Shown: one piece after another, positions 10,417-62,214 of the stretch
How positions within the stretch are numbered: position 1 is the first letter of the stretch
Layout of the letters: the number at the start of each line of letters is the position of its first letter
NCBI RefSeq assembly: GCF_947568905.1
Contig: NC_079168.1
Span: 78,864,001 to 78,928,000 of the forward strand
DNA: 64,000 nt
From: Ostrea edulis
Lineage: Eukaryota
Direction: 5' to 3'
Notes under the pieces: model-generated
The model's database searches: none
What the model was told of the DNA's origin: nothing
Seen by the model: only the letters and a program-made list of their open reading frames with translations
Made by a program: the position numbers and the translations under genes

Positions 10417-11640
10417 TTTGGTTGCATTCTGTAGCGGACACAAAGTCCACTTTAGTAACAATTGTTACAAAGAAGTATGGGTGGGTGTTCTTGGCAGCTC
10501 TATCCCTGACCAAGGTGAGAAATAGCAAAAATGTTGAGCACATTGCAATAGCAAAACATCTTTCCAACCGCAAATGTTTTTGCAAAGGGCCATAGTTCTT
10601 GTAAAAGTATTTCAAACGCGATGAAAATAGAAAATGACCGTTTTTGTATTAGTATGAATTGTTTTCTATCAATTAATCTTTACTTTCAAATCCAAATCGA
10701 AAAACATTACCCAAATTTTTACAAAAGATTACAATTGTGTGTAATTTAATGTTTTCCACTGAATTTAAAGATTTATGAATAATGCAAACATAAAAGTGGT
10801 CCCATAGAAAAGGTTTAGGTGAATATAGGTTTTTGGCAAGATCAAAACATTTGCAAATAGTTTACAAAGTTTTATAACTTTTGAGAGGGAGTGGGTATTT
10901 TATATTGTTGAAGTTAGATTACGGCGAACTTCCAGTAAACGCTACACATAATGTAAAAGTGTTGTGCAACTGGGTCCGTAAAAATCAGTTATGCTAATAT
11001 GTTGTGTTTGAATAACCCCATTGAATGGTATCTTTCTTTAGGAGGCTTTAAGCTTCTCCACGGACACAGTCACACTGTTTACCTCCCATCTCATTGGTCC
11101 GGAAGGTTCTGGGGACGTACCGGATGTAGTGGATCTCGCTGTGAGACCGGTGATTGTGGTGGAGGTCGACTTCATTGTAGCGGAGCTGGAGGAGTCCCCC
11201 CGGTCACTCTCGCCGAAATCACCTTTGACGGTGCCGGAAACCAAGACTTTTACGACATCAGTCTGGTTGACGGTTTTAATCTTCCATTGAGCATGCGCCC
11301 AAGAAGTGGAACAACAGAGGGACCTTCAGGGGCATATTATTGCAAGCCTGCTGGTTGCTACACAGATATTAACAACATCTGTCCGAGTGGTATGAAGCTT
11401 TACGGATCTGGCGGAGTTGTAGCTTGCAAAAGCGCCTGTTTAGCGTTTGGAAGATCAGAGTACTGCTGCAGCGGATCTCACAACACACCACAGACATGCC
11501 CAAATTTCTCCTACGCTCAAACCTTTAAGAGTGCTTGCCCGCAAGCCTACAGTTACGCCTATGATGACAATAAGAGTACTTTCACCTGCCGTGGCGCCGG
11601 GGGGAGTCAGTCTGAATATGATATTACTTTCTGCGGATAG
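10394..11640 (+). CDS. Secreted thaumatin-like (PR-5 family) protein, about 239 aa; coding exons 10394-10514 and 11042-11640
   Basis: Signal peptide MKALILLALVAFCSG. Phase-1 intron CAAG|gtgaga...ctttag|GA restores PDQGGFKL. Motifs WSGRFWGRTGC, CETGDCGGG, TLAE, DFYDISLVDGFN, CKSAC, YCC and AYSYAYDD are present, with 16 mature Cys and an intact R-E-D-D-D acidic cleft. Confidence 0.92.
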
Positions 11641-11770: not shown

Positions 11771-12795
11771 ACAGCTGCTTCTTCAACGAAAACGGAAAAC
11801 GGAAATATTCATATCTAATGATCAGTCATTCAAAAACTTACTTTGTTAAACACCACTCTGATTCCACGCACAAGTACTCTGAAGTTGAAATAAAAAATAT
11901 GCTAGAGTTCCTCATTGACAATATCTTCGTGGTCTTTGGTGATCAGGTCTTCCAACAGTCTGTTGGAATTCCCATGGGCACGAATTGTGCTCCTTTGTTA
12001 GCTGACCTGTTTTTATATTCATATGAAGCAGAATTTATTCAAAAACTTCTACGTGAGAAGAAAAAATCTCTCGCTGTGACCTTCAATTCGACTTTTAGGT
12101 ATATCGATGACGTTTTGTCTATTAACAATGATAGCTTTCATTCATATGTCGATTTGATATATCCCTGTGAGCTCGAAATAAAGGACACCACAGAGTCGTC
12201 CAGTTCTGCTTCATACTTAGATATTTTATTGAAAGTAGACATTAACAGCAAACTGACAACTCAACTGTATGACAAATGGGATGATTTCATCTTCTCCATC
12301 GTCAACTTCCCACATTTATGTAGCAATATTCCATTATCACCTGCATATGGTGTTTATATATCTCAACTGATTCGATATGCAAGAGCTTGTTCTGGGTATA
12401 GTCAGTTTTTAAATCGAGGTAAGCTACTGACAAACAAGTTGATGGTACAGGGATTTCAACAGTCTCGATCGAAGTCAGCATTTCGCAAATTCTGTGGTCG
12501 TTATAACGATCTAGTTCGTCAATACAACCTCGCATTGGGTCAAATGTTGTCTGACGTGTTTCATACCGATTGTTAAGCCGTTCTTGGCACACTGATTTTG
12601 ACTGCGGATAACTCCGTTTACCTGATCAGGATATGGGGCTCACGGCGGGTGTGACCGGTCAACAGGGGATGCTTACTCCTCCTAGGCACCTGATCCCACC
12701 TCTGGTGTGTCCAGGGGTCCGTGTTTGCCCAAATATCTATTTTGTATTGCTTGTAGGAGTTATGAGATTGATCATTGTTCGTTATCTTCACCTTG
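11771..12795 (+). mobile_element. 5'-truncated Penelope-like retroelement (Naiad-type), RT C-terminal half plus 3' end; ORF 11818-12576
   Basis: Q..GIPMGTNCAPLLADLFL, FRYIDD, YLD and YDK.DDF..SIVNFP motifs. There is a long insert before motif B, and the ORF stops after RT with no C-terminal GIY-YIG. Confidence 0.8.
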
Positions 12796-15159: not shown

Positions 15160-18047
15160 TATTTTTGTCTTTTCTTTTGACCTGTCCCCAAAATTCACCG
15201 TCTTTGATAAAGATAGAACAGAACCACCGATATAAAAGTCAGACACTCTGCCAAGTTCAAGAAGATCCGGAAGCTTTGGACGAGGTAGGTAGAGAATGTA
15301 ACTTTATTGTGATCTACAAGAATGGAAATATAAAAAAAAAATACAACATCAAGGGTGGAGGTAAGAGGGAGGGGGCAGCGGGAACACATCTCATAAGTGG
15401 GGGGCCACTCTTCGTAAATGGTTTTTTAAATATTTAATATCAATGTTAAAAAGTAAATTCCGTAAAAAAGAAAATCATAAGCACACAAGATGTATCATTA
15501 AATTTGTTCTGATTCGAAGATTTTCATTAGAATCATGTCGTATAAATGCTCATCTTCGTAGGTGAGATCACGCAAACACAGTATATAATAGAAGCATTGC
15601 ATTACTAATGTTTAGTAATATTACGTTTTAGAGAGAGGGAGAGAGACTTGAAGCATGCCAAACCACAAACGCGGAACGGTTGTTGGACTTGTGTGTGGAC
15701 CTCTTCCCACCCTCGTTTTGTTTGAAATAACGTCATCCAAACAAAATAATCTTACATGCAAAAGCTAAAATTAAAAACAAAAAGAGCTTATTTCAAATTA
15801 TGAGCACTAGATAAACAGATATGTTCGTTTTACAAAATGATAGGAAAAGACTTCTTTCACATGTCTTAACAAAAGGAATGATCCCTGTACAAATACAAGA
15901 ATTAAATCTGTTTGTCTTGATGTATGCAGACGACATGGTTATTTTTTCCGAAAGTGCTAATGATTTGCAGAGCATGCTGGATACACTTTTTACCTATACC
16001 ACAAAGTGGGATCTTTCAGTGAATGTAGAAAAAACAAAAATAGTTATTTTCAGAAATGGGAGTAAAATTAGCAGTAATGAAAGGTGGCATCTGAATGGGG
16101 AGCCTATAGAAATTGTTGATAAATTCACATACCTGGGTGTTTTAATGAATTACAATGGAAAGTTTAGCACCACACAAAAGCAATTGGCCAGCCAGGGCAG
16201 AAAAGCAATGTTTTCCTTGAAATCTAAAGTCAGCCAAATGTATTTAAACACAGAAACAATGTTATCCTTATTTGATACATATGTTGCAAGTATACTTAAT
16301 TACAGTTGTGAAGTTTGGGGTAGCCATAGTGCAAAGGATGTTGAAAAAGTGCACTTGGAATATTTGAAGTCTGTACTGGGTGTCAGGAAAAATACAAATA
16401 ATGGTATGGTGTATATAGAAACAGGCAGACTGCCCATGAACATTGTTCGCTGGTTTAGAATTTTTAAATTTTGGTTTAAATTATTACAAAGTGAAAATTG
16501 TATTTTGAAAACATGTTACAAAAGTTTACGTGAAGAAGCAGACAAGGGTGGAAATCGTGTGATTAATTGGGCTATCCATATAAAAAACAAACTATTTGAT
16601 ATAGGTTTGGGTCATATTTGGTGTAATCAAGAATATAATGGCGTATATTGTAATACTTATTTCCCAATAATTAAGCAAAGAATTTCTGATATTTTTGTGC
16701 AGAGTATTGTTGAACAAATCAACTCCTCACCAAGATGTAAAATTTATATGTACATTTATGACTATTTTTCATTGCAATTTTACTTGATGAAGGCTATACC
16801 ACATGTTTATAAAAAAAACATATTAGTAGAATTAGAATGTCTTCGCATAATCTTGCCATTGAGAGTGGACGTCATTTTAATGTAGCAAGAAATAACCGCT
16901 ATTGTAAACTTTGTAATTTAGATATTGAGGATGAATTTCATTTCATTCTAAAATGCCCTTACTTTATTGAATTACGCAGGAAATATATCAAGAAGTATTA
17001 TTGGAAAAACCCATCTGTTTTTAAACTTATACAATTATTAAGTGTAAAAAAATTCAAAGAGTTGTGTAATTTGGGGAAATATCTTTACTGTGCCTTTAAT
17101 TTACGTAATGATTTACTTATGTAGCATTCTCTGTCTATAAATTCACATCAGTATTGTGTAACATACCATATAATGTCATGCCATGCCATACTATACAATT
17201 GTTAACTTGTTTATTATTTTTGTAAACATGTATGCCATAAGACGTATGTCTTCAGCAATAAAGAATAATAAATGTCATGCGAGGCAGTATATGGACGGGT
17301 TCATTGCTGATAAGAGGGGTTGAGTATATATAGTAAATAATTGAATTTATAAAGTCACTGAACCAAGTCTCTACATAGAGTAGATAAATGAATATATAAA
17401 TTCATTGAACCAATGATAATGCGTAAATTTAGTAAAAATGAATCAATATGTCTTTGTTGTTGTTGTTGAATGTTTGAAAAAGTTCAACGTTCAACTCCTA
17501 GCAGTACATTCTGTACTTTGATTATATATGAGGAATCCCCGAACAAATTTGTAGGATTTCAATGCGAGATTTCATTTAGAATAAAACTGAATTTTGATAT
17601 TAGACATATATTGGAGAAATAATTTTGAATACAGTACTTTTTGGCGTGATTGTAATTGCTTCAGTAAGCTAAGAGAACTATTTGCATATTACGCAGTGGT
17701 GTGTTTTTTTCTATTTTTTCTTCTTCTGATAAACATATTTTTCTCATATAATGTTTCTATCGCTCTGTTCCATTTTCGCACCTGTTTGCATGACGTCAAA
17801 TACTTGTCAATTTCGATAACCCAGATTAACCGACCTTTATGGTGGTAAAACAAAAATGAAGAAAAAAAGAGAGAAAGTATTGAAATTACTTGGGGTATGG
17901 ATGTATCGGGTTTTGCTGGGGGTTTTCATATTATTTTGTTTAAAGAATTTGCCGAATTTTTACTGTTGAAATTCCATCTTTGGTGGATTGACAATTATTT
18001 TTGATTACTCATTCCTCAAAACCCTATTGCAGAATATTACTAGCACG
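15160..18047 (+). repeat. Local duplication, copy B, interrupted by a LINE
   Basis: Matches 6620-8350. The sequence that is contiguous at about 7370-7400 in copy A is split here by 15875-17272. Confidence 0.85.
15875..17272 (+). mobile_element. 5'-truncated non-LTR retrotransposon (RTEX/L2/CR1-like) with RT and C-terminal CCHC; one frameshift in an A-run near 16810
   Basis: YADD, VNVEKTKIVIF and FTYLG motifs. The 16837-17124 frame gives RMSSHNLAIESGR..RYCKLC..IEDEFHFILKCP. A-rich tail aataaagaataataaa. Confidence 0.9.
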
Positions 18048-29001: not shown

Positions 29002-29505
29002 TCAGTACCGCGGTCGCCGCCCACCTCTTTGATGAGAAGGACGGTAGGATAAATCATTAAATCCACCGGAAGTGAAACTTGAAGGTTGGTTTCCTCCACT
29101 CTGCCACTGAGATCCGCCGGGAAAATCTTGCTGGCCAAAATTTGTATCAAATCCTCCGTTATCCCAAGAGGAAGATGAGAATCCGCTTCCTTGTGAACCC
29201 CAACGTCCGGACCTATCGGAGGAAAATCCGTCGAAAGCAGAAACTCCCAACCCGGCGTTGTCAATTCCAAGATCGTTAGCTGAAGGGCTGACGCCTAAAG
29301 CTGGAGCTCCGATAAAATCAGCTGGAAAACCGCCAACATCTCCGATCTGATTTCCGAAGTTCACGCCATTGTTAAATTCTGACATCAATTGTCGTCTATC
29401 AGAGAAGAAATTGCCTCTGGGGGACATGAATCTATTGCCGCCGAATCGGTTGTGTACATGACAGGACGCGAAAGTCAGAAAGAGCAGACCTACTACCGCC
29501 TTCAT
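29002..29505 (-). CDS. Secreted Gly/Phe/Ser/Asp-rich low-complexity protein, 167 aa (cluster gene A)
   Basis: Signal peptide MKAVVGLLFLTFASC. An acceptor lies just before the ATG, and the basic tail is RPSHQRGGRRPRY. Confidence 0.85.
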   Translation of the reverse strand: MKAVVGLLFLTFASCHVHNRFGGNRFMSPRGNFFSDRRQLMSEFNNGVNFGNQIGDVGGFPADFIGAPALGVSPSANDLGIDNAGLGVSAFDGFSSDRSGRWGSQGSGFSSSSWDNGGFDTNFGQQDFPGGSQWQSGGNQPSSFTSGGFNDLSYRPSHQRGGRRPRY

Positions 29506-32760: not shown

Positions 32761-32880
32761 ATGAGTATTCCTTGTGACAAGACCTTTCCGTGGGTACCAA
32801 CATTTTTTACCCTTGACCTTGGAATTTGACCTACTTTTTGAAAACTTTAACCTTGCTAATACCTTTTGAACAGTAAGTGA

Positions 32881-32916
<36 letters not shown>

Positions 32917-32952
32917 CAAGGGCTTTCCGTGGGTACCAACATTTTTGACCCC

Positions 32953-33020
<68 letters not shown>

Positions 33021-33026
33021 AAGAAA

Positions 33027-33060
<34 letters not shown>

Positions 33061-33249
33061 TACAAGATCTTTCCGTTGGTATTGAACCTTTTGACCTTGA
33101 CATTTGACCTACTTTAATTTTTTTTTTTACATTGGTCATAACTTCTAAATGGTAAACATTAGAGCTTTCATATTGTACATGACCATTTCTTTTGACAAGA
33201 TCTTTCTACTGGTACCAAGATATTTGCCCTTGTGACCTTGGCCATCTTC

Positions 33250-33298
<49 letters not shown>

Positions 33299-33299
33299 C
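32761..33299 (+). mobile_element. Helentron/Helitron-like non-autonomous element with an internal about 140-bp tandem array
   Basis: Units at 32761, 32900, 33046 and about 33179 (atgagtattccttgtgacaag). The 3' end has the hairpin gtgtttcacaaacac followed by atcttgtt. Confidence 0.65.
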
Positions 33300-34017
33300 T
33301 ATGTACACCTGATTTTGTATTTTCTATGTACTCTTTGCTTTCTATTTTTCTATGTGCACCTGGATTTGTATTCAAGTACACCTGGGTTTATATTTTTCTT
33401 TATACACCTGGGTTTGTATTTTCTATGTACACTTTCCTTTGTATTTTTCTATGTACACCTGACTTTGTATTTTCTATGTACACTTTGCTTTGTTTTTTTG
33501 TATGTACATCTCTGCATTTGTCTATGATCACCTTGCTTTGTAATTCATCTGCAAACACCTTCCTCTGCATCTATGTATTGATGAAAATTCTTTGCAGGCA
33601 CTCATGTACATCTTGTTTTGCATTTGTTTGTGTACACTTTTTATTTGTCTATGCCCACCTTGTTTGATATTTCATAATTTTCATTGTATGCCTATTTTGC
33701 GATCAATGTGTATAAAAACAGAAAAGGTTCAGAGTCATGTTATTTATTACTAGACAACAAATCACACAAAACAAACTCGTGATCGCAGGACCATCTCACT
33801 GTCTGAACTGGAAGCTGTTAGCGACAATTAGTCTGTAATCAAATAAATAAATTCACGAATGAATAATCACAAACTTCGTTGAAAGGTTTGCAATTTAATG
33901 AAATTAGTAAGTGGTTTTGCGTTTTGAATTGAGGAAATGACTTTTGTAACCAAATAAATGTGTACAAAACTTACCAAAAAGGGAGCAAGAGGCGTCCGCT
34001 TTCTCCTGATTTGTGAG

Positions 34018-35814
34018 TTAATACCCGGATCTCCTTCTGGAGGGACGGCGTGGACGCATCCTTCGGACGTTCCTTCTCCTGGTTATAGTCGGTTGGGTGG
34101 CGTAATACTCATCTTGATTTACAGGGGGGTCAGTCACCACGGGTCTTCTGTAGACTGGACGGCGGGTGGGCTCAGGATAGCTGTATTTACGAGGGTATTT
34201 TGAACTATATCCGTACTTCTTCTTACTCCGCCTCTTCTCATATTTTCCATTGTCATATTTTCCATTATCGTATTTTCCATTGTCGTCTTTTCCATTGTCG
34301 TATGACTTTTTGGTGGGGTATTTTTTGTCCATGTCGTACTTGGTTTGTTTTCTTGGGACGTACTTATCGTAGGAGCCTTTCTGGTGTTTTTCTGGCATCT
34401 TATCGTACTTCGGCTGGTACTTGTCTACAGGTTGGTAATTATCAACCATTTTGTTGGCTTTTGTAGGGTAAGTATCCATATTCTTGTCTACGATGGGATA
34501 TTTGTCGTTCTGATCGAACCTGTTTGGGTAAACATCTAGTCCTCTGTCGTAGACCTTTGTTGGATAAGGCTCGTAAACCTTCGTGGGATATGGGTCAACT
34601 TTTTTGTCCATCTTGGATGGGTAGGTATCAAAGCCCTTCTCGAATTTGGCCGGATAAACGTCTGGGACTTTTTCGTACTTTTTTGATGGTTCATCATATT
34701 TTGGGAACTTGTCGTATCCATTGTCGTACTTACGTGGATATTTGTCCATAGTGTTATCGTACTTTGGTTGGTATTTATCAGCTGGATACTTATCGGCTGG
34801 ATATTTGTCCATTGGATATTTGTCCATTGGATATTTGTCAACTGGATATTTATCCACTGGATACTTATCGGCTGGATATTTGTCCATTGGATATTTGTCA
34901 ACTGGATATTTATCAACTGGATATTTATCCATGGGATACTTATCAACTGGGTATTTATCTACGGGATACTTATCAACTGGATATTTATCCACTGGATATT
35001 TCTCGGCTGGATATTTATCCACTGGATACTTCTCGGTTGGATATTTATCCACGGGATACTTATCAGCTGGATATTTGTCAACTGGATACTTATCGACTGG
35101 ATATTTGTCTACGGGATACTTATCAACTGGATATTTATCCACAGGATACTTTTCATCTGGATATTTGTTCACTGGATATTTGTCTGTCGGGTATTTTTCT
35201 ACTGGGTATTTATCCATTGGATATTTATCGTAGTTTGATGGATTATTTTCCGGATATTTACCGAAAGATTTGTCGGGATAACCATCCGTCTTCTTCGCAG
35301 GATACATGTCCATCTTTTTGTCCATCTGCCGAGGGTAAGCATCCATTTTCTTGTCCATTTTTGGCTGGTAGTTGGAAACATCTTTCTTCATTTGTCCCTG
35401 GCCAACAGGGGGTCTAGGTTGGTAGTTCGTATCCACAATGATGGCCTGGTTTTCGTCGTTGTCGAAAGCTCTAGTCTCAATAATACCAACTCCACTTTGG
35501 ACGGTTCCAAAATCGGTCTGGACATCAAATGGACGGCCGACGACATCGAGTCCTCGGACCTGAGCTACTGCGGTATCGAATCCTGGGGGCATCCCATTCT
35601 CAAGTCCCACAACAGCTACTGTATCGAATGTATTGGGTGTATTGGAGAATCCACTTCCGCCGTCTCTGGGAAACGGAACGTCAGCGGTTATACGCCCGCC
35701 AAAGTTATCTCCTGCGATCTGGAATGTGTCCACGCAATTTGGATCACGGGGATCACACACTTGCTGACAAAGAGTCGAGGATAGGAACAAGAGGGAGAGT
35801 ACTATCGTCAACAT
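34018..35814 (-). CDS. Secreted 598-aa Tyr/Lys/Asp/Pro repeat protein with about 30 tandem [DE]KYP[VMAT] pentapeptides (cluster gene B)
   Basis: Acceptor ttaacag|ATG and signal peptide MLTIVLSLLFLSSTLC. CDPRDPNC motif, 15-bp repeat at about 34770-35230, and tail RRMRPRRPSRRRSGY. Confidence 0.92.
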   Translation of the reverse strand: MLTIVLSLLFLSSTLCQQVCDPRDPNCVDTFQIAGDNFGGRITADVPFPRDGGSGFSNTPNTFDTVAVVGLENGMPPGFDTAVAQVRGLDVVGRPFDVQTDFGTVQSGVGIIETRAFDNDENQAIIVDTNYQPRPPVGQGQMKKDVSNYQPKMDKKMDAYPRQMDKKMDMYPAKKTDGYPDKSFGKYPENNPSNYDKYPMDKYPVEKYPTDKYPVNKYPDEKYPVDKYPVDKYPVDKYPVDKYPVDKYPADKYPVDKYPTEKYPVDKYPAEKYPVDKYPVDKYPVDKYPVDKYPMDKYPVDKYPVDKYPMDKYPADKYPVDKYPVDKYPMDKYPMDKYPADKYPADKYQPKYDNTMDKYPRKYDNGYDKFPKYDEPSKKYEKVPDVYPAKFEKGFDTYPSKMDKKVDPYPTKVYEPYPTKVYDRGLDVYPNRFDQNDKYPIVDKNMDTYPTKANKMVDNYQPVDKYQPKYDKMPEKHQKGSYDKYVPRKQTKYDMDKKYPTKKSYDNGKDDNGKYDNGKYDNGKYEKRRSKKKYGYSSKYPRKYSYPEPTRRPVYRRPVVTDPPVNQDEYYATQPTITRRRNVRRMRPRRPSRRRSGY

Positions 35815-36234
35815 CTGTTAAAATATTTAACAATGACTTAGATATGTCTACAACTGACCATTCATCGTTAAGAAAAAAGACTATTGTAAATTGTACTTTA
35901 TTTCACAGGGAATAACATTATAACATGGTGATTTTACAGTAATTAAATCATACTTCAATCTTACAAAGAAGATTCTCAGTCATCATTATTTGGTGAATAG
36001 TTTACATAATTAATCAAAGTAGAAGTTAATACGGTAACCTACATTTTTGGAATGCATGCTGAATTATGCTTTATCCGTTTATTTTATCATTCAGTTAAAA
36101 ACTTGATTATACATACTGATATCTAGTTTCAAGATTAATTATAAAACATTGGTTTGTTTTTAAATATATATGCATATGCATAAATTCATTTTTACCAATT
36201 CACGATCTGTTTCACTTCCACACCTAATTCTTAC

Positions 36235-36297
36235 CTCTCTTCAGCTCGGTGAACTGCTTTTCCGATGACTTGTGAAACTGTTGACGCCTTTTATATA
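36235..36297 (-). promoter_or_regulatory. TATA box (36289-36297) and non-coding exon 1 of gene B
   Basis: Minus-strand TATATAAAAGG, then donor GAG|gtaaga at 36235/36234. Confidence 0.7.
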
Positions 36298-39931: not shown

Positions 39932-40519
39932 CTTTTCTTTATTTACATGTATATCTGAACATTGATTACAATTCAGATACTGGATTTGTGAGTTGAAATT
40001 AATCAAATGAGAGTGGTAAAAATTCACCTTTATATCGTATAATTTATCCAGGTACGTTATTCTGGTGTGTGGAATGCTAATTGATACTAAGTTAGAATAA
40101 TCTAAGCTGTATACCAAAGTTGGTCTTCATGGAACTTTACGGCTCTATGCATCCCAAATAGAGATCGGGTTCAATGCGTCGGGTGTGGGATTCACTCAAT
40201 ATTATATGCTGAGCGCGAAAGTTGATATCAACAGACGCCATGAATTTATCACAATAAATACGTTACCTTTATAAATTTAGATATTCACCTGCTTGCAGTC
40301 TTGTATCGGAAAAAAACCATGTAAACAAAAAAGCACCCTTCGTGACCCGCCACCTCTGACATGCTCAGAAACCAACATCCGGTATCATCTTTTCTTTTCC
40401 GCCGTTGTGGAGTGCAGTCACGTTTTTCTCGAGGAGGAAAAGAATTTTTTCTACTTGCTAATTTTGGCTAAGTATTGCATGGTAGTTTTTGTTATTACTT
40501 TATTACATTATTAAGCATT

Positions 40520-42186
40520 ATGGCGAATGAAGGTGAAAATGTTAAATTACCTTTTATTGCTGTAGAGGGAGAGTACTGGGACTCTGTTGACTCTAGAAGT
40601 TTTGGTCCCATGGAATCTGACCCTTTTCTTTCTTATGGGAATGTCATGGATTCCCCAGGAATTCCTCCTACCCCGGTTACTTCGGTAGGTCAAATTAGAG
40701 CTACATCTACTATTACGCGACCTCCTGGTAGTCCGGTGGCTAGTTCTCGCCCTGAGAGTTTTCCTTCGGGTAATCGTAGGGAGACGTTTTATCGGTCTAG
40801 GTGGCCAGCTAGATTTCCTCATCCCATGTATTCTGTGCCACCTTATCCCTACTCGACTCAACCTGTGTGGACAGGGCAAGGTTTTGTTAGTAAACCAAAC
40901 TTAATGGAGTCCTCCAATAAGGACGAAATTAAATGTTTGGTTTCCTCTATTCAGAAACTGGAGGCTTCTATTTCTTCAAAATTTGTGACAGTGGAACGTA
41001 GACTAGATTTGATTGAAAAAAGCAAATCAGCTACGTCCCCCACTGTTCCTGGGGCTGCTCTTGTCACCCCTCGGCCCGTTTTTGATAATAAAGCGGACGA
41101 GGAGGTTGACTCATTATCTTTGGCTCCCAGTAGTCAAGAGGCATCTTTTCTCCGGTTCCTTCAGTCGATGAAGTTGGGCTTTCTCAGGAGCAACTTCCAG
41201 TAGAGAATCTCACTCTGAAAGCTAAAGTGTACGCAATTCGTAGAGAATTGTCAGGTCCCGATTCTTTAGTTTCTCCTCCCAGGAGTTCTCACAAACCTTC
41301 TGATTTTCAGTCCTGCTCTGGTCTTGTGAGAGATTCTTCTAAGTCGTATGCTTCTTTTCCCGAGTCTAGTCATTTTAAATCTGCATTGGCTTCCATTAAT
41401 TCTCATCTTGTCGACGATCAGATGTCCTCCAATAAGGCCTCTAATTTAGTTAGACAAAATCTGGCTTTTAGTACATCTTCTTTCCCTGGTAAGGTTAGAA
41501 TGAAGTATTTTGATATTCATGATGTTTCCTTGGGAAAATCTCAACCTGTTTTTGATAAGACTTTTTCTAATCTTCTTGGTGCTAAGTCTTCTGAGGGGGT
41601 CAAGTTATCTCAGACTTCTTATTCTAGGTCGGAGAACAATCTTCGGGGTGTTGCCGCAGCTTTACAGTATGTGGAGCACTTTCTTGCTGCTGCAGGTGCC
41701 TCTCTTAAAGATAAGGGCGAAGAATTTGATGATGTTCGTTCTTTTCTTCTCCAAGTAGATAGATGTCTTTGCACTTCTCAGCTCTTGAATCTTGGCACTA
41801 TTGCCAATTTTTCTTTAGCTAGGAGACAAGAGATTCTTAAAAAATCTAACGTCTCTGAGTTTCTTAAAGACAACCTACTTTTTTCTCCTCTTCATAAAGA
41901 GCAGTTATTTGGCATCTCTTTACGCAAATTACAAGAGGAATTACACAAAGAACCTCCTACTGTTAAAGTAGATGTACAACTCAACAATGGTAGTTCTAGG
42001 CGTGTTTCTTGTTCTTCTAAATCAGACTCTTCTAGAAGTAAGTCGCAAGGTGCTACTAAATCTGGCTCTTCTCTGCAAGGTTCAAATAATCTTAAGAGAA
42101 GTAATGAGCATCGTTCTTTCCCATCGGCTTCTGGATCTAATAATAAAAAACCCAAAGTAGCCAAGGGTAAGAAATCTCAGTTTTGA
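40520..42186 (+). pseudogene. DIRS gag-like ORF1, frameshift near 41147
   Basis: ORF 40520-41203 continues in another frame (SPVPSVDEV..KAKVYAIRREL) to 42186. It is positioned 5' of RT. Confidence 0.7.
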
Positions 42187-42255
42187 TGCCTCCCCCCTCC
42201 TGTAGCACAATCCACTCTTTCCGAGGAAGTAGGTGTTCCCTTTCCTCATCTTCCT

Positions 42256-44295
42256 GTGGGAGGACGCCTCTCTCTTTTTCTTCCTCATTGGTCCCGTCTC
42301 ATTTCGGACAAATGGGTTCTTTCTGTGCTACGGAGGGGTTTAGAGCTTCAATTTCGAGAACAGCCTCCTCTCTCTGCGGTTCCTCTGGAATTTTCTATGA
42401 CCAGAGACCCGTGGAAAAATCTGTTGTTACAAGAGGAAGTGTCTCTACTTCTCCAAAAGAATGTATTGGAAGAAGTAAGTCCACCTCTAGGTTGGGGGTT
42501 CTACTCTCGTCTCTTTCTTGTACCCAAAAAGAATGGACAAATGAGACCTGTGTTGGACCTCTCTTTTCTGAATCAGTATCTGGTGATTCCACATTTCAAA
42601 ATGGAGACCAACAGGTCGATCAGAACCTCTCTCCATACAGGGATGTGGACGTCTTCTTTAAATCTGACGGATGCTTATTTTCATGTCCCTATAGCTCCGG
42701 CTTATCGGAAGTTTCTTCGTCTGGTCTGGGAGGGCAAGGTATATGCTTTCAGGGCAATGCCTTTTGGCCTATCTACTGCTCCACTAGTGTTCACAAAAAT
42801 TTTTCAAACAGTGGTTGCGTATCTACACTCCCAGTCCATTTTCATCCATACATATCTAGACGATTCTCTGATCAAGAATTTTTCTTTCAACCTTCTTCAT
42901 CAACATACTCATCGAGTTATTTATCTTCTGTTGAAGCTGGGTTTCCTTATTTCTTGGGAAAAATCAGAGATAGTTCCCAGTCAGAGTTTCATTTTCCTAG
43001 GGGAACAATTTCGAACAGATCTTGGGATAGTTCTTCCTCCAGAGGAGAAATTTCTCAAGCTTCAGTATCTGTTGGATCAACTACTTTCAGCCAAACAGGC
43101 TTCAGCTCGCTAGTTTCTACAACTGATAGGTTTTCTGATTTCTCTGATGGACATAGTACCTTTAGGTCGTCTTCATACTCGCCTCATTCAGTGGTATCTT
43201 CTGGAATTTTGGGTACCAGCCTCACAACAGTGGGAAGCTGTTATTCCCATTCTTCCCAGATTGTATCCTCATCTTCTGTGGTGGTCAGTGAGAGAGAATG
43301 TTATGATAGGTTGCTCGCTAGACCCCCCAGTTCCTTCTATGACCCTGTTTACAGATGCTTCTCTGACAGGCTGGGGAGCTACCCTGGAAGGCAGAGAGGC
43401 ATCAGGTATATGGTCCGGTCTCCAGTTGACAGAACACATCAATTTACTGGAGATGCGGGCTGTTCTTCTGGCATTGAAACACTTTTCCCAATTTGTTCAG
43501 GGTCAATCTCTGATGATAGCCACAGACAATACAACAGTAGTGGCTTATCTGCAGAATCAGGGCGGCACACATTCTCAGTCTCTTTACCTTCTGTGCAAAG
43601 AAATTCTGTTGTTTTGCCGTTCCCTGGGAATTCGCTTGTCAGTCAGGCATGTTCCTGGCAATCTGAATCTAGTAGCGGATGCTCTCTCAAGGTCACTGCA
43701 TCCAGTGAATACAGAATGGGAGTTACATCCAGCAGTCTTTCAGGAGATCTGTCTCAAGTGGGATCGTCCTCATATAGACCTCTTTGCTACGCATCTGAAT
43801 TGCAAACTGCCAACGTTTGTCTCTCCGATTCCAGACAACAAAGCTTTAGCAGTGGATGCAATGTCTTTCGATTGGAAGGGGATGTTTTCTTACATGTTTC
43901 CTCCTTTTCGCCTCCTTCCCAAGATTTTACACAAAATCAGGGTAGAAATTTGCAAGACCATTCTTATTGCTCCAGCATGGCCAAAACAATCTTGGTTTCC
44001 AGATCTTCTTCAACTGTGTTGTGCGAGACCAATTCTGCTTCCTCTCAGGAAAGATCTTTTGTCTCAATTCAAAGGCAGGAAAGTTCATCAGAATCTTTCC
44101 AACCTCCATCTACACGCATGGTTACTGTCAGGGAATCTCTCAGACAGGATGGCTTTTCTGACAGAGCAGCCAAACGTATCTCTAGTTCAGTCAGAAAATC
44201 TACAGGAGCAATTTATGACTCTAAGTGGAACATCTTCTGTTCTTGGTGTCGTTCAAAGGAAATTGATCCTCTCGCAGTTACTGTCCAACAGTTAG
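42256..44295 (+). pseudogene. DIRS RT/RNase H/methyltransferase-like ORF with one premature TAG (43111-43113)
   Basis: YSRLFLVPKK, RPVLDL, MPFGLSTAP, YLDD, FLG; RH TDAS..GWGA, HINLLE, TDN, ADALSR; MT-like IDLFA, YMFPPF, APAWPKQSWF. Confidence 0.92.
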
Positions 44296-45212
44296 CTGAG
44301 TTTTTAGTCTATCTGTTTGAAGACAAAGGTTTCTCTCCCTCTACTATTAAGGGCTATCGTTCAGCTTTATCCAGAACTATAGCTTTGTCAGGAGGTCCTG
44401 ATTTTGGGAAGAATGAGTTCTTGTCCCTCATGGTCAAGAATATTTGTTTGGAACGACCTAGACAACGTAGGTTGGTTCCATCCTGGAATTTAGCTTTGGT
44501 TCTTAGGACTTTACAATTTCCTCCTTTCGAACCTTTATTTTTAGCTCCCTTTAAGTTTTTGACCTTGAAGTGCTGTTTTTTATTAGCTTTAGCTTCTGGT
44601 CGTAGAAGGAGTGAGATTCATGCTTTCTCCATTGCAGATTCTTGTCTCAGATTTTCTGCAGATAATTCTTCAGTTACTCTGTTGACAGATCCATCTTTCT
44701 TAGCCAAGAATCAGTTATCAGACAAAGGTTCTGGACCTATTGTTATTCCTGCTCTACCTAAATCATTAGGTAATCAGGATTTATGTCCAGTGCGTACACT
44801 TCAGAAATATATTTCTGTTTCGTCAACGCTCAGACCTTCTGGTTCTACTAGACTTTTCATTCCTATTAAGAAAGGTCTAAGTGATATTTCGGCTAAGACT
44901 ATTTCTACTTGGCTTTGTCATACTGTTAAGATGGCTTACCAATCTTCATCTCCAGAAGCCTTGTCTCGTGTTCAAGTTCAGGCACATGAAATTAGAGCCT
45001 TGTCTTGCTCCTGGGATATTTTCAATTCCTCCTCTATGTCGGAAATCATGTCAGCTGGTTATTGGAGGTCTGATAGTACCTTTTATAACCATTACCTTAG
45101 ATCTATGCCCCTTCATAGTGACAGTTTGTTCTCGCTTGGACCTCTAGTTTCAGCTCAAAAAGTGGTTTTTCCTCCTAGTTGCCAATCTCAGGGGGATTCA
45201 GCTCTACTTTGA
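44140..45212 (+). CDS. DIRS tyrosine recombinase (C-terminal part of the 1009-aa ORF 42183-45212 overlapping RT/RH)
   Basis: STIKGYRSA, LASGRRRSE (R), KN, AHEIRA (H..R) and GYW..STFYNHY (Y) motifs. Confidence 0.92.
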
Positions 45213-49437: not shown

Positions 49438-50349
49438 ATGCGGGTCAGTATTATAATTTGTGTATTGGTGAATATTTGGGGTATGGCAGTTAGCGAAGAC
49501 AGGGTGTACACGGAAGAATTCGTAATGAACCTTGTTCAGAGGATGGATCGTCTGGAACAGGAATTATCTCTGTTCAAGAAAGAAAGCATTGCCAACATCC
49601 GGGAACTTCAGACCAAACTTCGACAGTCTAGCCAGAGAGCAGACGAGCTGGAGAGCAGGTTGGAGAGGCACCAGGCCGTTGTATCGAGATGGGTGAGTGA
49701 CCATGAAGGCACCATGGATGAAGTTAATTCACCTGAATCGGAAAAGCAAAATTCGAGCAACACAAATCAAGGTTGGAACTAAATCTGATCGCATCATACT
49801 GTAATTCTATCTACCAGGATTTGATAATTGCGGAGGGCAAAATATGAGAATGTCACTCTATGTATCGTTCAATCTTTTTTATGTTTTTTTTTTTTAGATC
49901 GTATCCAAAGACTTTTGATTCCCTCAATTCCCGACACTACAACCCAATCGAGCACCCTTCCTGTTGCTTTCTATGCGCACGCATCTGATCATCAGACGGG
50001 ATTGGGTACTGGACAGACTATTCACTACAAAACAGTTATCACTAACGCTGGAAATGGATTCGATTCCAAAATCGGGATATTTAAGGCACCTGCAGCAGGG
50101 TACTACTATTTCGCGACAACTTTGGTCAGTGGTCAAGGCGAGACTGTGAGAAGTAGCATCGTTCACAATAGCCAAGACGTTGCACATGTGTTCGCGGGAA
50201 ATGAAGGGACATACGGGTCTGGTTCTAACTCTGTTGTCCTCTATTTGAATGTAAATGATGACGTGTGGACCAGGGTATCTATTGACACAAATGCTCATGT
50301 ATATGCCGATTCGTGGTGTACATTCTCTGGGTTTCTGATTTCAAATTAA
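49438..50349 (+). CDS. Secreted C1q-domain-containing protein with coiled coil, about 261 aa; exons 49438-49771 and 49898-50349
   Basis: Signal peptide and coiled coil. Phase-1 intron CAAG|gttgga...tttag|AT. gC1q motifs VAFYA, VITNAGNGFD..IGIFKAP..GYYYF, GSNSVVLYL..NDDVW and TFSGFLI. Confidence 0.92.
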
Positions 50350-60855: not shown

Positions 60856-62214
60856 TTAGTATCCTGAGCTAATTCGTCTAACTGGTCTGATTGGCATATT
60901 TCTTGGGTAATTTGAAACTCTACCATGTGACCTTGGAAAGTATGGCATTGGTCTTGGCATTCCAAATCTTGGGTACGGTCTTTTCATCGGTAAGATGCTT
61001 GGTCGTCTGCGTTTGTATATTGGACTTCCTTTTCCAAATCGGGGTTGGTATGATTTTCCGAAACTTGGAGCATAGCCCATGGATCTTCCTTTACCGAATC
61101 CTCTGCCAATATTACCCCCGAGTCCCAGACCTCCACCAATTCCCAGCCCACCACCAATACCCTTTCCTCCGATTCTTCGGCCACCGATGATTCCCTTTCC
61201 GCCTCCGATTCTGCGAGGTCCTCCTCCAATTCCAATTCCCTTTCCTCGAGAACCCCAGCCACGACCACCTCCAAACCCTTTACCAAATTTTCTGTTTTGT
61301 CCAAAGCCTCTGTTGTTACTGATAATAGGACCTAGTGATCCACCAAATTTCCCGCCTCCGACTCCTATACCAAAATCTTTGTTTTGCCCAAAGACACCAC
61401 CGCCAACCATGGGACCACCAGCTATTCCTCCTTGGAAACCAATTCCTCCATCAAATCCTCCAACTGAGGGTCCTCCAATCATACTCCCCTTTCCTCCGTC
61501 AAATCCTCCAACTGAGGGTCCTCCAATCATACTCCCCTTTCCTCCGTCAAATCCTCCAGAAAAGCTTCCTTTTCCTCCGTCAAATCCTCCAGAAAAGCTT
61601 CCTTTTCCTCCATCAAATCCTCCAGAAAAGCTTCCTTTTCCTCCGTCGAATCCTCCAGAAAAGCTTCCTTTTCCTCCATCAAATCCTCCAATGAAACCAC
61701 CTCCACCGCCAAAGTTTCTTCCGACGGCCGCCCCACCAATAATTCCTCCCTTTCCTTCATCAAAACTGCCTCCTGCTCCGAGAAAAGATCCATCAATGCC
61801 CGAGTTCACATCGAAACCAGGTTCAAAACCACCGCCTGCGCCCAGATTGGCATCCAGACCAATGTTAGAGTCAAGACTAAGCCCTCTAGTGGCAAATGCG
61901 ACACCGCTCAGATCGTTCTGGAATCCATTATCGAATCCGTTATCAGCCAATCCGACATCCGTACCGGGAAAATCGTTGACTACTCCCCCGTCAAATCCGA
62001 ATTCAAGTTTTGGTTCCACAAAATTGTTGAGTCCCTGTCCGAACCCGACATTTGGAGCTTGATCGAACCCAATGGAGTTGATAAATCCTCCCCTGCCGCC
62101 CCCTCCGCCCAGACTTCCGCTGTTCCCGAAGGAATCACATCCCAGGTCCCCGGGGTTACAGGGCTGGAGTCCGTAACAATAGGCGGCGCTCAGGAGAATC
62201 AGTACAACCTTCAT
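60856..62214 (-). CDS. Secreted Gly-rich repeat protein, about 452 aa (shematrin-like composition; cluster gene D)
   Basis: Acceptor tgttgtttag|G ATG at 62214, so the listed upstream Met is probably intronic. Signal MKVVLILLSAAYCYG, CNPGDLGC, GGFDGGKGS repeats, and tail PIRPVRRISSGY. Confidence 0.9.
   Translation of the reverse strand: MKVVLILLSAAYCYGLQPCNPGDLGCDSFGNSGSLGGGGGRGGFINSIGFDQAPNVGFGQGLNNFVEPKLEFGFDGGVVNDFPGTDVGLADNGFDNGFQNDLSGVAFATRGLSLDSNIGLDANLGAGGGFEPGFDVNSGIDGSFLGAGGSFDEGKGGIIGGAAVGRNFGGGGGFIGGFDGGKGSFSGGFDGGKGSFSGGFDGGKGSFSGGFDGGKGSFSGGFDGGKGSMIGGPSVGGFDGGKGSMIGGPSVGGFDGGIGFQGGIAGGPMVGGGVFGQNKDFGIGVGGGKFGGSLGPIISNNRGFGQNRKFGKGFGGGRGWGSRGKGIGIGGGPRRIGGGKGIIGGRRIGGKGIGGGLGIGGGLGLGGNIGRGFGKGRSMGYAPSFGKSYQPRFGKGSPIYKRRRPSILPMKRPYPRFGMPRPMPYFPRSHGRVSNYPRNMPIRPVRRISSGY

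What the first reader, a model, noticed from the sequence alone, without database searches (positions are those of the whole stretch)
34018..35814. About 30 tandem DKYPV pentapeptides: possible DOPA/lysine cross-linking protein
Seen: about 30 consecutive [DEN]KYP[VMATD] units, additional KYD/DNGKY repeats, and very high Tyr and Lys content with each Tyr next to a Lys. Known: mussel foot proteins use Tyr converted to DOPA adjacent to Lys in Pro-containing repeats (mfp-1 AKPSYPPTYK) for adhesion and quinone tanning. Inference: a charge-balanced (D/K) tanning or cement substrate with a repeat unit I do not recognise from described proteins.
Basis: partly seen in the sequence, partly recalled or inferred. 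Interest (0 to 1): 0.7.

Follow-up and report, generated by a model that had tools for sequence, protein, structure and literature searches.

The report
Oyster secreted protein, 30 DKYPx repeats
This is a real oyster gene for a secreted, disordered structural protein with 30 perfectly phased Asp-Lys-Tyr-Pro-x units. It sits in a cluster of shell/ligament-type matrix genes and is a good but untested candidate for tyrosine-based cross-linking, not a proven mussel-glue relative.

Summary
Window 34018-35814 (-) is one 598-aa open frame with exactly 30 consecutive [DEN]KYPx pentapeptides (residues 196-345). Composition is K 13.9 %, Y 12.2 %, D and P 12.7 % each. Lys, Tyr and Pro are invariant in all 30 units despite synonymous codon variation, so the peptide is under selection.

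The gene has a TATA box, a short non-coding exon, a 420-nt intron and an acceptor directly before the ATG. The protein has a signal peptide, an acidic Tyr-free N-terminal block, a charge-neutral repeat core and an Arg-rich tail ending SGY. The ESM Atlas model is disordered.

The only true homologue found is a 223-aa Magallana gigas fragment auto-named "adhesive plaque matrix protein-like". All other hits are repeat-on-repeat.

At least 11 further secreted low-complexity ORFs, including two abductin-like ones, lie within 150 kb. This points to an oyster-restricted structural matrix protein.

DOPA/Lys tanning is plausible: quagga-mussel Dbfp1, a DOPA protein, repeats DKYPGGGN. It remains untested, because no RNA, proteomic or modification data could be reached. 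The protein is not a member of the mfp-1 or extensin families. Moderate interest.

The parts
36287..36297 (-). TATA box (TATATAAAAGG) of the gene
   Evidence: Read directly. The same element sits at the same relative place upstream of the two neighbouring genes. Promoter function is inferred.
36235..36268 (-). Predicted short non-coding first exon (5' UTR). The start is approximate; it ends at a GTAAGA donor (GT at 36234-36233).
   Evidence: Sequence. The layout is repeated in the genes at 29002-29505 and 60856-62214. No RNA data were available to confirm it.
35815..36234 (-). Predicted 420-nt intron in the 5' UTR; the acceptor ...ttttaacag lies directly before the ATG
   Evidence: Nine of the eleven other secreted ORFs of the cluster have an acceptor-like AG within 10 nt before the ATG.
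34018..35814 (-). Single coding exon, 598 aa plus stop (TAA at 34018-34020)
   Evidence: The ESM Atlas holds this protein letter for letter. Of 7 SNPs in another individual, 6 are synonymous.
35767..35814 (-). Signal-peptide-like N-terminus (residues 1-16, hydrophobic core, T-L-C before Q17)
   Evidence: By inspection of the translation; no predictor was available.
35395..35766 (-). Acidic, Tyr-poor (one Tyr) N-terminal block (residues 17-140, pI 4.05, net -10, G/V/D-rich, CxPxDxxC motif)
   Evidence: There is no homologue anywhere. The neighbour gene 60856-62214 has a like block with pI 4.05 and the same Cys motif.
35230..35394 (-). Degenerate lead-in repeats (residues 141-195, MDKKMD.YP type)
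34780..35229 (-). Core array: 30 x [DEN]KYPx (residues 196-345), net charge 0
   Evidence: K, Y and P are invariant; between units, positions 2-4 show 423 synonymous and 0 non-synonymous codon-pair differences.
34240..34779 (-). Degenerate K/Y/D/P repeats (residues 346-525), including DNGKY x3 (34241-34303)
   Evidence: This part and the tail align to the M. gigas fragment P0004; MAFFT gives 68 % identity and nearly all Tyr conserved.
34021..34239 (-). Basic Arg/Pro/Tyr tail (residues 526-598, pI 11.4, net +19), ending RRRSGY
   Evidence: The neighbour gene's tail (pI 12.0) ends RRISSGY.
33743..33748 (-). Candidate poly(A) signal AATAAA, about 270 nt after the stop
   Evidence: Sequence; function inferred.
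60856..62214 (-). Neighbour gene with the same block plan: signal peptide, acidic N block with CxPxDxxC, Gly-rich GGFDGGKGSFS repeats, basic tail ending SGY
   Evidence: It is probably a distant paralogue with a different repeat core; sequence similarity alone is not significant.
29002..29505 (-). Neighbour gene, 167 aa, secreted-type, G/S/F-rich, tail ...GGRRPRY, same exon layout

Best explanation
It encodes a secreted, intrinsically disordered structural protein found only in oysters. The protein has three charge blocks: an acidic N-terminus with a single Tyr (at 131), a long charge-neutral K-Y-P repeat core, and a strongly basic Arg-rich tail. It belongs to a genomic cluster of genes for secreted low-complexity matrix proteins of the kind that the bivalve mantle secretes into shell, periostracum and ligament.

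The most likely working (inferred, not shown) is as follows. The opposite-charged ends and Lys-Tyr cation-pi contacts drive self-association with itself, or with acidic matrix and mineral. The 73 exposed Tyr, 49 of them directly preceded by Lys and 45 followed by Pro, are then oxidised by one of the many tyrosinases or by a peroxidase. They are locked by DOPA-quinone/Lys or di-Tyr cross-links into an insoluble organic layer.
For: Shown:
- The frame is intact, with 30 in-phase units.
- K, Y and P are invariant in 30/30 units, with 423 synonymous and 0 non-synonymous pair differences; 6 of 7 SNPs in another individual are synonymous.
- The gene has a TATA box, a 5'UTR exon, an intron, and an acceptor directly before the ATG. 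Both neighbours share the whole layout, and nine other cluster ORFs have an acceptor-like AG just before the ATG.
- The M. gigas homologue P0004 conserves nearly every Tyr across about 220 residues.
- There is no other homologue among 1.8 billion representatives and no paralogue in the genome.
- The Atlas model has pLDDT 0.33, i.e. disordered.
- The block charge pattern is shared with the gene at 60856-62214.
- At least 11 further signal-peptide plus low-complexity ORFs lie within 150 kb. Two carry abductin-type FGGMGGG repeats; the abductin motif is GGFGGMGGGX (PMC9999432).
- At least 28 tyrosinase-domain loci are in the genome.

From the literature:
- Lineage-restricted repetitive low-complexity proteins dominate mantle secretomes (PMC5400390).
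- Gly/Tyr-rich regions of KRMP and periostracal proteins are held to be quinone-tanned (PMC3191542).
- The DOPA-bearing Dbfp1 repeats DKYPGGGN (PMC6474901).
- Phenoloxidase granules have been reported in the O. edulis pediveliger foot gland (PMC6337334).
Against: There is no expression evidence. The four runs that hold the locus, and the Logan contigs of the neighbour gene, are collinear genomic DNA; no RNA run was returned. No proteomic or DOPA data exist for it. The tissue (mantle, foot, other) is inferred only from genomic neighbours, whose own functions are also inferred from composition. No tyrosinase gene is linked to the locus; the nearest lies about 50 Mb away. Similar [DE]KYPx arrays occur in unrelated proteins (a fungal hydrophobin, a butterfly protein), so the motif alone does not prove tanning.
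Confidence: 0.5

Rival explanations
1. It is a true adhesive: a component of the larval (pediveliger foot gland) or adult (mantle) oyster cement. K-DOPA pairs would displace surface water and ions and bind the substrate, as in mussel and dreissenid foot proteins.
For: K always directly precedes Y. The DKYP core is shared with the DOPA protein Dbfp1 of the quagga-mussel byssus. The M. gigas homologue is auto-named 'adhesive plaque matrix protein-like'. O. edulis larvae have phenoloxidase granules in the foot gland. A 2025 review of marine adhesive proteins that covers bivalve adhesion names no sequence-defined cement protein of true oysters.
Against: The automatic name rests on composition only. 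The C. gigas pediveliger candidate text read (term search only) mentions no Lys/Tyr-rich repeat protein. The genomic neighbours look like shell or ligament matrix proteins rather than glue. Dbfp1 itself is thought to be a cuticle varnish or cohesive component, not an interface adhesive.
Confidence: 0.2
2. It is a secreted matrix protein that is not oxidatively tanned. It would act as a polyampholyte scaffold or coacervate former that binds mineral or chitin through its charged blocks, with Tyr serving only in cation-pi and hydrophobic cohesion.
For: The block charge architecture (pI 4.05 / neutral / 11.4) and the disorder fit this role. In the quagga-mussel study no hydroxylated Tyr was seen in the Dbfp1 spectra, and DOPA content is low at 0.5-2.8 mol %.
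Against: A Tyr content of 12 % with strict K-Y-P conservation, in a genome with at least 28 tyrosinase loci, is typical of tanned matrices. The insolubility of such matrices is usually attributed to cross-links.
Confidence: 0.2
3. It is a hinge-ligament protein that supplies Tyr/Lys cross-linking sites beside the abductin-like elastomers encoded nearby.
For: Two abductin-like genes (FGGMGGG repeats) lie 84-100 kb away in the same cluster. Ligament proteins are highly repetitive, low-complexity and insoluble.
Against: In P. fucata, the ligament proteins identified lacked acidic-residue-rich regions, whereas this protein has 15 % D+E. The Met-rich motif also occurs in nacre and prism proteins, so the neighbours do not specify ligament.
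Confidence: 0.07
4. It is not a functional gene: a 15-nt satellite that happens to be open in one frame.
For: Many other period-15 satellites in this genome translate into look-alike periodic strings and 'hit' the repeat.
Against: Those satellites carry stops or lack flanks, whereas here 195 + 253 non-repeat residues are open in frame. Substitutions in the array are confined to synonymous sites and to position 5. SNPs are 6/7 synonymous. A 68 % identical homologue exists in another oyster genus. Promoter and intron signals are present.
Confidence: 0.03

Closest known systems
Dreissenid foot protein 1 (Dbfp1/Dpfp1; quagga and zebra mussel byssal cuticle protein)
   Same: Secreted, tandem short repeats built on the same D-K-Y-P core (DKYPGGGN). 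The repeats hold both Asp and Lys, and fragment pI ranges from 4.4 to 10. Dbfp1 carries DOPA on Tyr (PMC6474901).
   Different: Its repeat is an octapeptide with a GGGN spacer, which is absent here. The lineage is a distant heterodont. Homology outside the motif was not tested, because no reference sequence is held by the tools. The resemblance is most likely convergent.
Mytilus foot protein 1 (mfp-1, 'adhesive plaque matrix protein')
   Same: A Tyr/Lys/Pro-rich tandem-repeat secreted protein. It is the namesake of the automatic annotation of the M. gigas homologue.
   Different: mfp-1 has a decapeptide AKPSYPPTYK repeat and is strongly basic, without acidic residues in the repeat (my own knowledge). 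Here the unit is a pentapeptide, the repeat is neutral with one Asp per Lys, and there is no PPTYK.
Pearl-oyster prismatic/periostracal framework proteins (KRMP, shematrin) and the wider class of lineage-restricted mantle RLCD proteins
   Same: Signal peptide plus repetitive low-complexity domains and no globular domain. Lineage-restricted. Basic region plus Tyr-rich region proposed to be quinone-tanned (PMC3191542, PMC5400390). A basic C-terminus ending in Tyr, as I recall for shematrins (memory, not checked).
   Different: No sequence similarity. Those proteins are Gly/Tyr-rich, whereas this one is D/K/Y/P-rich. Mantle expression and shell location are shown for them and unknown here.
Pfam Extensin_1 (PF02095), plant extensin-like repeats
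   Same: A Pro/Tyr/Lys/Val periodic repeat; the best Pfam hit (95.9 bits). Extensins are Tyr-cross-linked wall proteins (my own knowledge).
   Different: The score is below the gathering threshold of 105 bits. The match is compositional and the source is an animal protein.

Membership tests
mfp-1 / adhesive plaque matrix protein (Mytilus) | Tandem decapeptide AKPSYPPTYK-type repeat | tested here: not met
   The unit is a 5-residue [DEN]KYPx with a 15-nt period; there is no PPTYK in the protein.
mfp-1 / adhesive plaque matrix protein (Mytilus) | Strongly basic repeat domain without acidic residues | tested here: not met
   The repeat array has net charge 0 and pI 6.5, with one D/E per K.
mfp-1 / adhesive plaque matrix protein (Mytilus) | Tyr converted to DOPA and Pro to Hyp; made in the foot gland | not testable with these tools
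   No RNA runs or proteomic data could be reached.
mfp-1 / adhesive plaque matrix protein (Mytilus) | Sequence homology outside composition | not tested
   No tool-supplied mfp-1 sequence was available. None of the best 150 library hits carries the mfp-1 decapeptide.
Dreissenid fp1 (Dbfp1/Dpfp1) | Repeat built on D-K-Y-P | tested here: met
   DKYP occurs 27 times here, 25 of them in the array; the Dbfp1 consensus is DKYPGGGN.
Dreissenid fp1 (Dbfp1/Dpfp1) | Octapeptide with Gly-rich GGGN spacer | tested here: not met
   There is no GGGN in the protein, and the repeat core contains no Gly.
Dreissenid fp1 (Dbfp1/Dpfp1) | DOPA content; byssal location | not testable with these tools
   This needs biochemistry. 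As far as I know, adult true oysters make no byssus.
Mantle-secretome RLCD structural proteins (shematrin/KRMP kind) | Signal peptide plus repetitive low-complexity domain and no conserved globular domain | tested here: met
   (pLDDT 0.33; only a sub-threshold Pfam hit).
Mantle-secretome RLCD structural proteins (shematrin/KRMP kind) | Lineage-restricted distribution | tested here: met
   The only true homologue is from Magallana gigas. The N-terminal block has no match at all.
Mantle-secretome RLCD structural proteins (shematrin/KRMP kind) | Expression in mantle epithelium and/or presence in shell matrix | not testable with these tools
   All retrievable reads and contigs are genomic DNA.
Pfam Extensin_1 (PF02095) | Score at or above the gathering threshold (105 bits) | tested here: not met
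   95.9 bits.

The most novel reading that the evidence does not exclude
This is a main Tyr/Lys cross-linking or adhesive protein of true oysters, in periostracum or cement, whose sequence basis is still unknown. It would have evolved a DKYP-based repeat independently of dreissenid byssal fp1. It would have escaped shell and cement proteomics because trypsin, Asp-N and chymotrypsin all cut its core into 5-residue peptides.
Probability: 0.2. Interest if true: 0.65.

Novelty: new member of a known kind. Interest (0 to 1): 0.4.

Why it matters
A 2025 review of marine adhesive proteins that covers bivalve adhesion names no sequence-defined cement protein of true oysters (PMC12817120), and I know of none for oyster periostracum either. 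A conserved, selected K-Y-P repeat protein that shares its core motif with a known DOPA protein of an unrelated bivalve would be a concrete candidate and a clean case of convergent motif evolution.

The finding also carries a practical point. In-silico trypsin digestion gives 36 five-residue peptides, so the repeat core is invisible to standard bottom-up proteomics. Only about 20 flanking peptides can report the protein.

If the protein proves to be an ordinary minor matrix component, it simply adds one more lineage-restricted low-complexity protein to an already long list.

Tried and rejected
- **Whole-protein and N-terminal word searches** found nothing.
- **The exhaustive HMMER search** gave 2183 hits. 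All of the best 150 except P0004 align only to the repeat (for example DKHTV, EGEPV and DTVPV arrays) and are compositional.
- **Own-genome 'paralogues'** turned out to be period-15 satellites, many with stops.
- **Expression evidence:** Their contigs cover gene and intergenic DNA evenly, so they are DNA. The Logan contigs of the neighbour gene are also collinear genomic DNA.
- **The look-up of encoding contigs** has no record for P0004, so the rest of the M. gigas gene could not be read.
- **The ESM Atlas** gave no usable feature hit, and its structure hits all had TM <0.36.
- **Literature:** the string DKYPV occurs in no paper. The oyster single-cell atlas supplement has no fp1 entry. The search was unproductive.
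- **The different C-terminal end of P0004** is not explained by a frameshift in the O. edulis DNA.
- **Own structure prediction** was judged pointless after the Atlas result.
- I did not align against mfp-1 or Dbfp1 sequences, because none is held under a tool reference.
Full report
**Observation**

The minus strand of window 34018-35814 is one open frame of 598 codons.
- Residues 196-345 are exactly 30 consecutive pentapeptides of the form [DEN]-K-Y-P-x.
- Tandem Repeats Finder sees the same array as a 15-nt period x 30.5 copies at 34772-35229, with a 60-nt higher-order period. A second small 15-nt array at 34241-34303 encodes DNGKY three times.
- Composition is K 13.9 %, D 12.7 %, P 12.7 % and Y 12.2 %.
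- 'Each Tyr next to a Lys' is exact in the array. Overall it holds for 49 of 73 Tyr, and the order is always K-Y, never Y-K.

**Is it a gene?** Several independent lines say yes.
- In the 30 units the codons for K, Y and P vary only synonymously (AAA/AAG 21:9, TAT/TAC 27:3, four Pro codons). That is 423 synonymous and 0 non-synonymous pairwise differences at these three positions. Amino-acid changes are confined to position 1 (D/E/N) and position 5. The array is thus old enough to have diverged at silent sites, and the peptide is under selection.
- Of seven SNPs seen in another individual's contigs, six are synonymous.
- Upstream there is a TATA box (36287-36297), a stretch that fits a roughly 35-nt non-coding exon ending in a GTAAGA donor, and a 420-nt intron whose acceptor lies directly before the ATG. 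An AATAAA lies about 270 nt after the stop.
- The ESM Atlas holds the 598-aa protein letter for letter, so a gene caller produced the same model.
- The splice structure itself remains a prediction, because no RNA was available.

**Anatomy of the protein**
- Residues 1-16 look like a signal peptide (by inspection).
- Residues 17-140 are acidic (pI 4.05, net -10), G/V/D-rich, hold a single Tyr (at 131) and start with a CxPxDxxC motif.
- Residues 141-195 are degenerate MDKK..YP repeats.
- Residues 196-345 are the perfect array, with net charge 0.
- Residues 346-525 are degenerate K/Y/D/P repeats.
- Residues 526-598 are an Arg/Pro/Tyr tail (pI 11.4, net +19) ending RRRSGY.
- All 73 Tyr lie after residue 130.
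- The Atlas model has mean pLDDT 0.33 and pTM 0.13, i.e. disordered.
- Pfam gives only a sub-threshold Extensin_1 match, 95.9 against 105 bits.

**Organism and relatives**
- The assembly has 894,786,893 bases and the scan lists ten pieces. This fits the 894.8-Mb, 10-chromosome Ostrea edulis assembly (PMC10979132). That is circumstantial but consistent with the gene content.
- Word-based searches with the whole protein and with the N-terminal block found nothing.
- The exhaustive HMMER search gave 2183 hits. In the best 150, every match but one lies on the repeat alone, against unrelated periodic proteins.
- The exception is P0004, a 223-aa fragment from Magallana gigas (UniRef A0A8W8IC30), auto-named 'Adhesive plaque matrix protein-like'. 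It aligns to residues 346 to about 575 at 68 % identity in the MAFFT alignment (55 % by BLASTP over 87 % of the query), with nearly all Tyr conserved.
- The rest of that gene could not be reached.
- In the window's own genome neither the N-terminal nor the C-terminal part has a paralogue. The many repeat 'hits' are period-15 satellites.
- As far as these databases go, the family is restricted to true oysters.

**Genomic context**
- Two other minus-strand genes in the window have the same exon layout (TATA, short 5'UTR exon, 280-420-nt intron, acceptor at the ATG) and encode secreted-type low-complexity proteins: 29002-29505 and 60856-62214.
- The second shares the whole block plan: the CxPxDxxC motif, an acidic N block of pI 4.05, a neutral repeat core (here GGFDGGKGSFS), and a basic tail of pI 12.0 ending RRISSGY. 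Its sequence similarity to the target is not significant on its own. I read it as a likely distant paralogue whose repeat core has been replaced.
- Extending 100 kb to each side shows at least eleven further ORFs with signal-peptide-like starts and low complexity. Nine of them have an acceptor-like AG within 10 nt before the ATG.
- Two of them combine an Asp-rich N-terminus with FGGMGGG repeats. This is the motif of abductin, the scallop hinge-ligament elastomer (GGFGGMGGGX; PMC9999432), and of the Met-rich insoluble proteins of pearl-oyster nacre, prism and ligament (PMC7591529).
- None of these ORFs has a Pfam domain.
- This is the pattern described for bivalve mantle secretomes: lineage-restricted, rapidly evolving genes with repetitive low-complexity domains (PMC5400390).

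**Mechanism**

What is shown:
- It is a selected, secreted-type, disordered protein.
- It has a block polyampholyte design.
- It carries 49 K-Y pairs and 45 Y-P pairs.

What is inferred:
- It is laid down in an extracellular organic layer and cross-linked through its Tyr.

Supports for the inference, all by analogy:
- Gly/Tyr-rich regions of KRMPs and of periostracal-groove transcripts are regarded as quinone-tanned (PMC3191542).
- Tyrosinase is found in the insoluble nacre fraction (PMC7591529).
- This genome has at least 28 tyrosinase-domain loci, none linked to the gene.
- Most to the point, quagga-mussel foot protein 1, a byssal cuticle-type protein with 0.5-2.8 mol % DOPA, is built on the repeat DKYPGGGN (PMC6474901).
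The pentapeptide form and the oyster lineage are new.

Caveats:
- The same paper saw no hydroxylated Tyr in the Dbfp1 spectra.
- Related [DE]KYPx arrays occur in a fungal hydrophobin (P0092, Pfam Hydrophobin 38 bits), in a butterfly protein (P0033) and in a metagenomic surface-type protein (P0088). The motif alone therefore proves nothing about chemistry.

**Which material?** This could not be resolved.
- Shell organic framework or periostracum is favoured by the neighbours.
- Cement is favoured by the K-Y adjacency, by the analogy to foot proteins, by the reported phenoloxidase granules in the O. edulis pediveliger foot gland (PMC6337334), and by a 2025 review of marine adhesive proteins that names no sequence-defined cement protein of true oysters (PMC12817120).
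- Ligament is suggested only by the abductin-like neighbours.
The Logan contigs carrying the neighbour gene are collinear with the genome, intron included. There is thus no expression evidence either way.

**A practical consequence.** In-silico trypsin digestion yields 36 five-residue peptides from the core. By the same logic, Asp-N and chymotrypsin would also give pentapeptides. Only about 20 peptides of 7-40 residues from the flanks are detectable. Absence from published shell proteomes would therefore not be informative unless those flanking peptides were searched.

**Comparison and membership**
- It works most like the Tyr/Lys-rich tanned matrix and byssal cuticle proteins.
- It is not a member of the mfp-1 family. 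Two defining features fail: it has a pentapeptide rather than a decapeptide repeat, and it is neutral rather than basic.
- It is not a member of Pfam Extensin_1, because the score is below threshold.
- It shares only the four-residue core with dreissenid fp1.
- It fits the operational class of lineage-restricted mantle-type RLCD proteins in architecture and distribution. The expression criterion is untested.

**Verdict**

The finding is a real and tidy feature, correctly described. It is a new member of a known kind: an uncharacterised, oyster-restricted repeat protein already present in automatic annotations. Interest is moderate.

Alignment against mfp-1 or Dbfp1 sequences was left out because no tool reference holds them.

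Noticed in passing
G000:C5:78778134-78926256 (window -85866 to 62256): A cluster of at least 12 ORFs with signal-peptide-like starts and low-complexity sequence. Most have an acceptor-like AG within 10 nt before the ATG, suggesting a common 'non-coding exon 1 + single coding exon' design. It includes four or five small Pro-rich paralogues (…PLLALSFA…NSLGPNPS…PPPP…).
   Followed up: partly
L033:4254-5204 (+) and L024:557-1159 (+) (C5:78798254-78799204, 78814557-78815159): Two tandem paralogues combine an Asp/Phe-rich acidic N-terminus (FGDDDYFDD…) with FGGMGGG repeats like scallop abductin, followed by GYGKK motifs. They have no Pfam hit. They may be oyster ligament or Met-rich shell framework proteins.
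   Followed up: partly
window 60856-62214 (-): A 452-aa Gly-rich secreted-type protein with four exact GGFDGGKGSFS units plus variants. It has the same CxPxDxxC start, acidic N block and basic …SGY tail as the target. It is likely a distant paralogue with a swapped repeat core.
   Followed up: partly
window 29002-29505 (-): The 167-aa G/S/F-rich secreted-type protein belongs to a 90 %-identity cluster with members of 127-215 aa from resequencing runs. This suggests length (indel or repeat) polymorphism among individuals.
   Followed up: partly
window 32800-33363 and 33297-33542: Just downstream of the gene lies a very high-copy repeat: summed contig depth is 10^5-10^6 against 10-130 for the gene, with many alternative joints. 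A 26/51-nt tandem repeat follows it.
   Followed up: no
window 40475-45212 (+): Long ORFs that look, by eye, like a retroelement with reverse transcriptase/RNase H and a C-terminal recombinase-like part. Further RT-like fragments lie at 11818-12576 and 15821-16885. Not scanned against Pfam.
   Followed up: no
window 10999-11640 (+) and 49828-50349 (+): A Cys-rich ORF that looks like a thaumatin-like protein exon (an earlier scan note, s1-287759, concerns its 5' end), and an ORF that looks like a C1q-type globular domain. Both were judged by eye only.
   Followed up: no
P0092, P0033, P0088 (hits): [DE]KYPx pentapeptide arrays also occur in three unrelated proteins: upstream of a fungal hydrophobin domain (P0092, Pfam 38 bits), in an unnamed protein of the butterfly Iphiclides podalirius (P0033), and in a metagenomic protein with a hydrophobic C-terminus (P0088). 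This looks like convergent use of the motif in secreted surface proteins.
   Followed up: partly
G000, genome-wide: There are 32 matches above threshold to the Pfam tyrosinase domain, in several tandem groups (for example C4:60.16-60.42 Mb, C1:71.95-72.12 Mb, C1:95.12-95.15 Mb). None is within 49 Mb of this gene.
   Followed up: no
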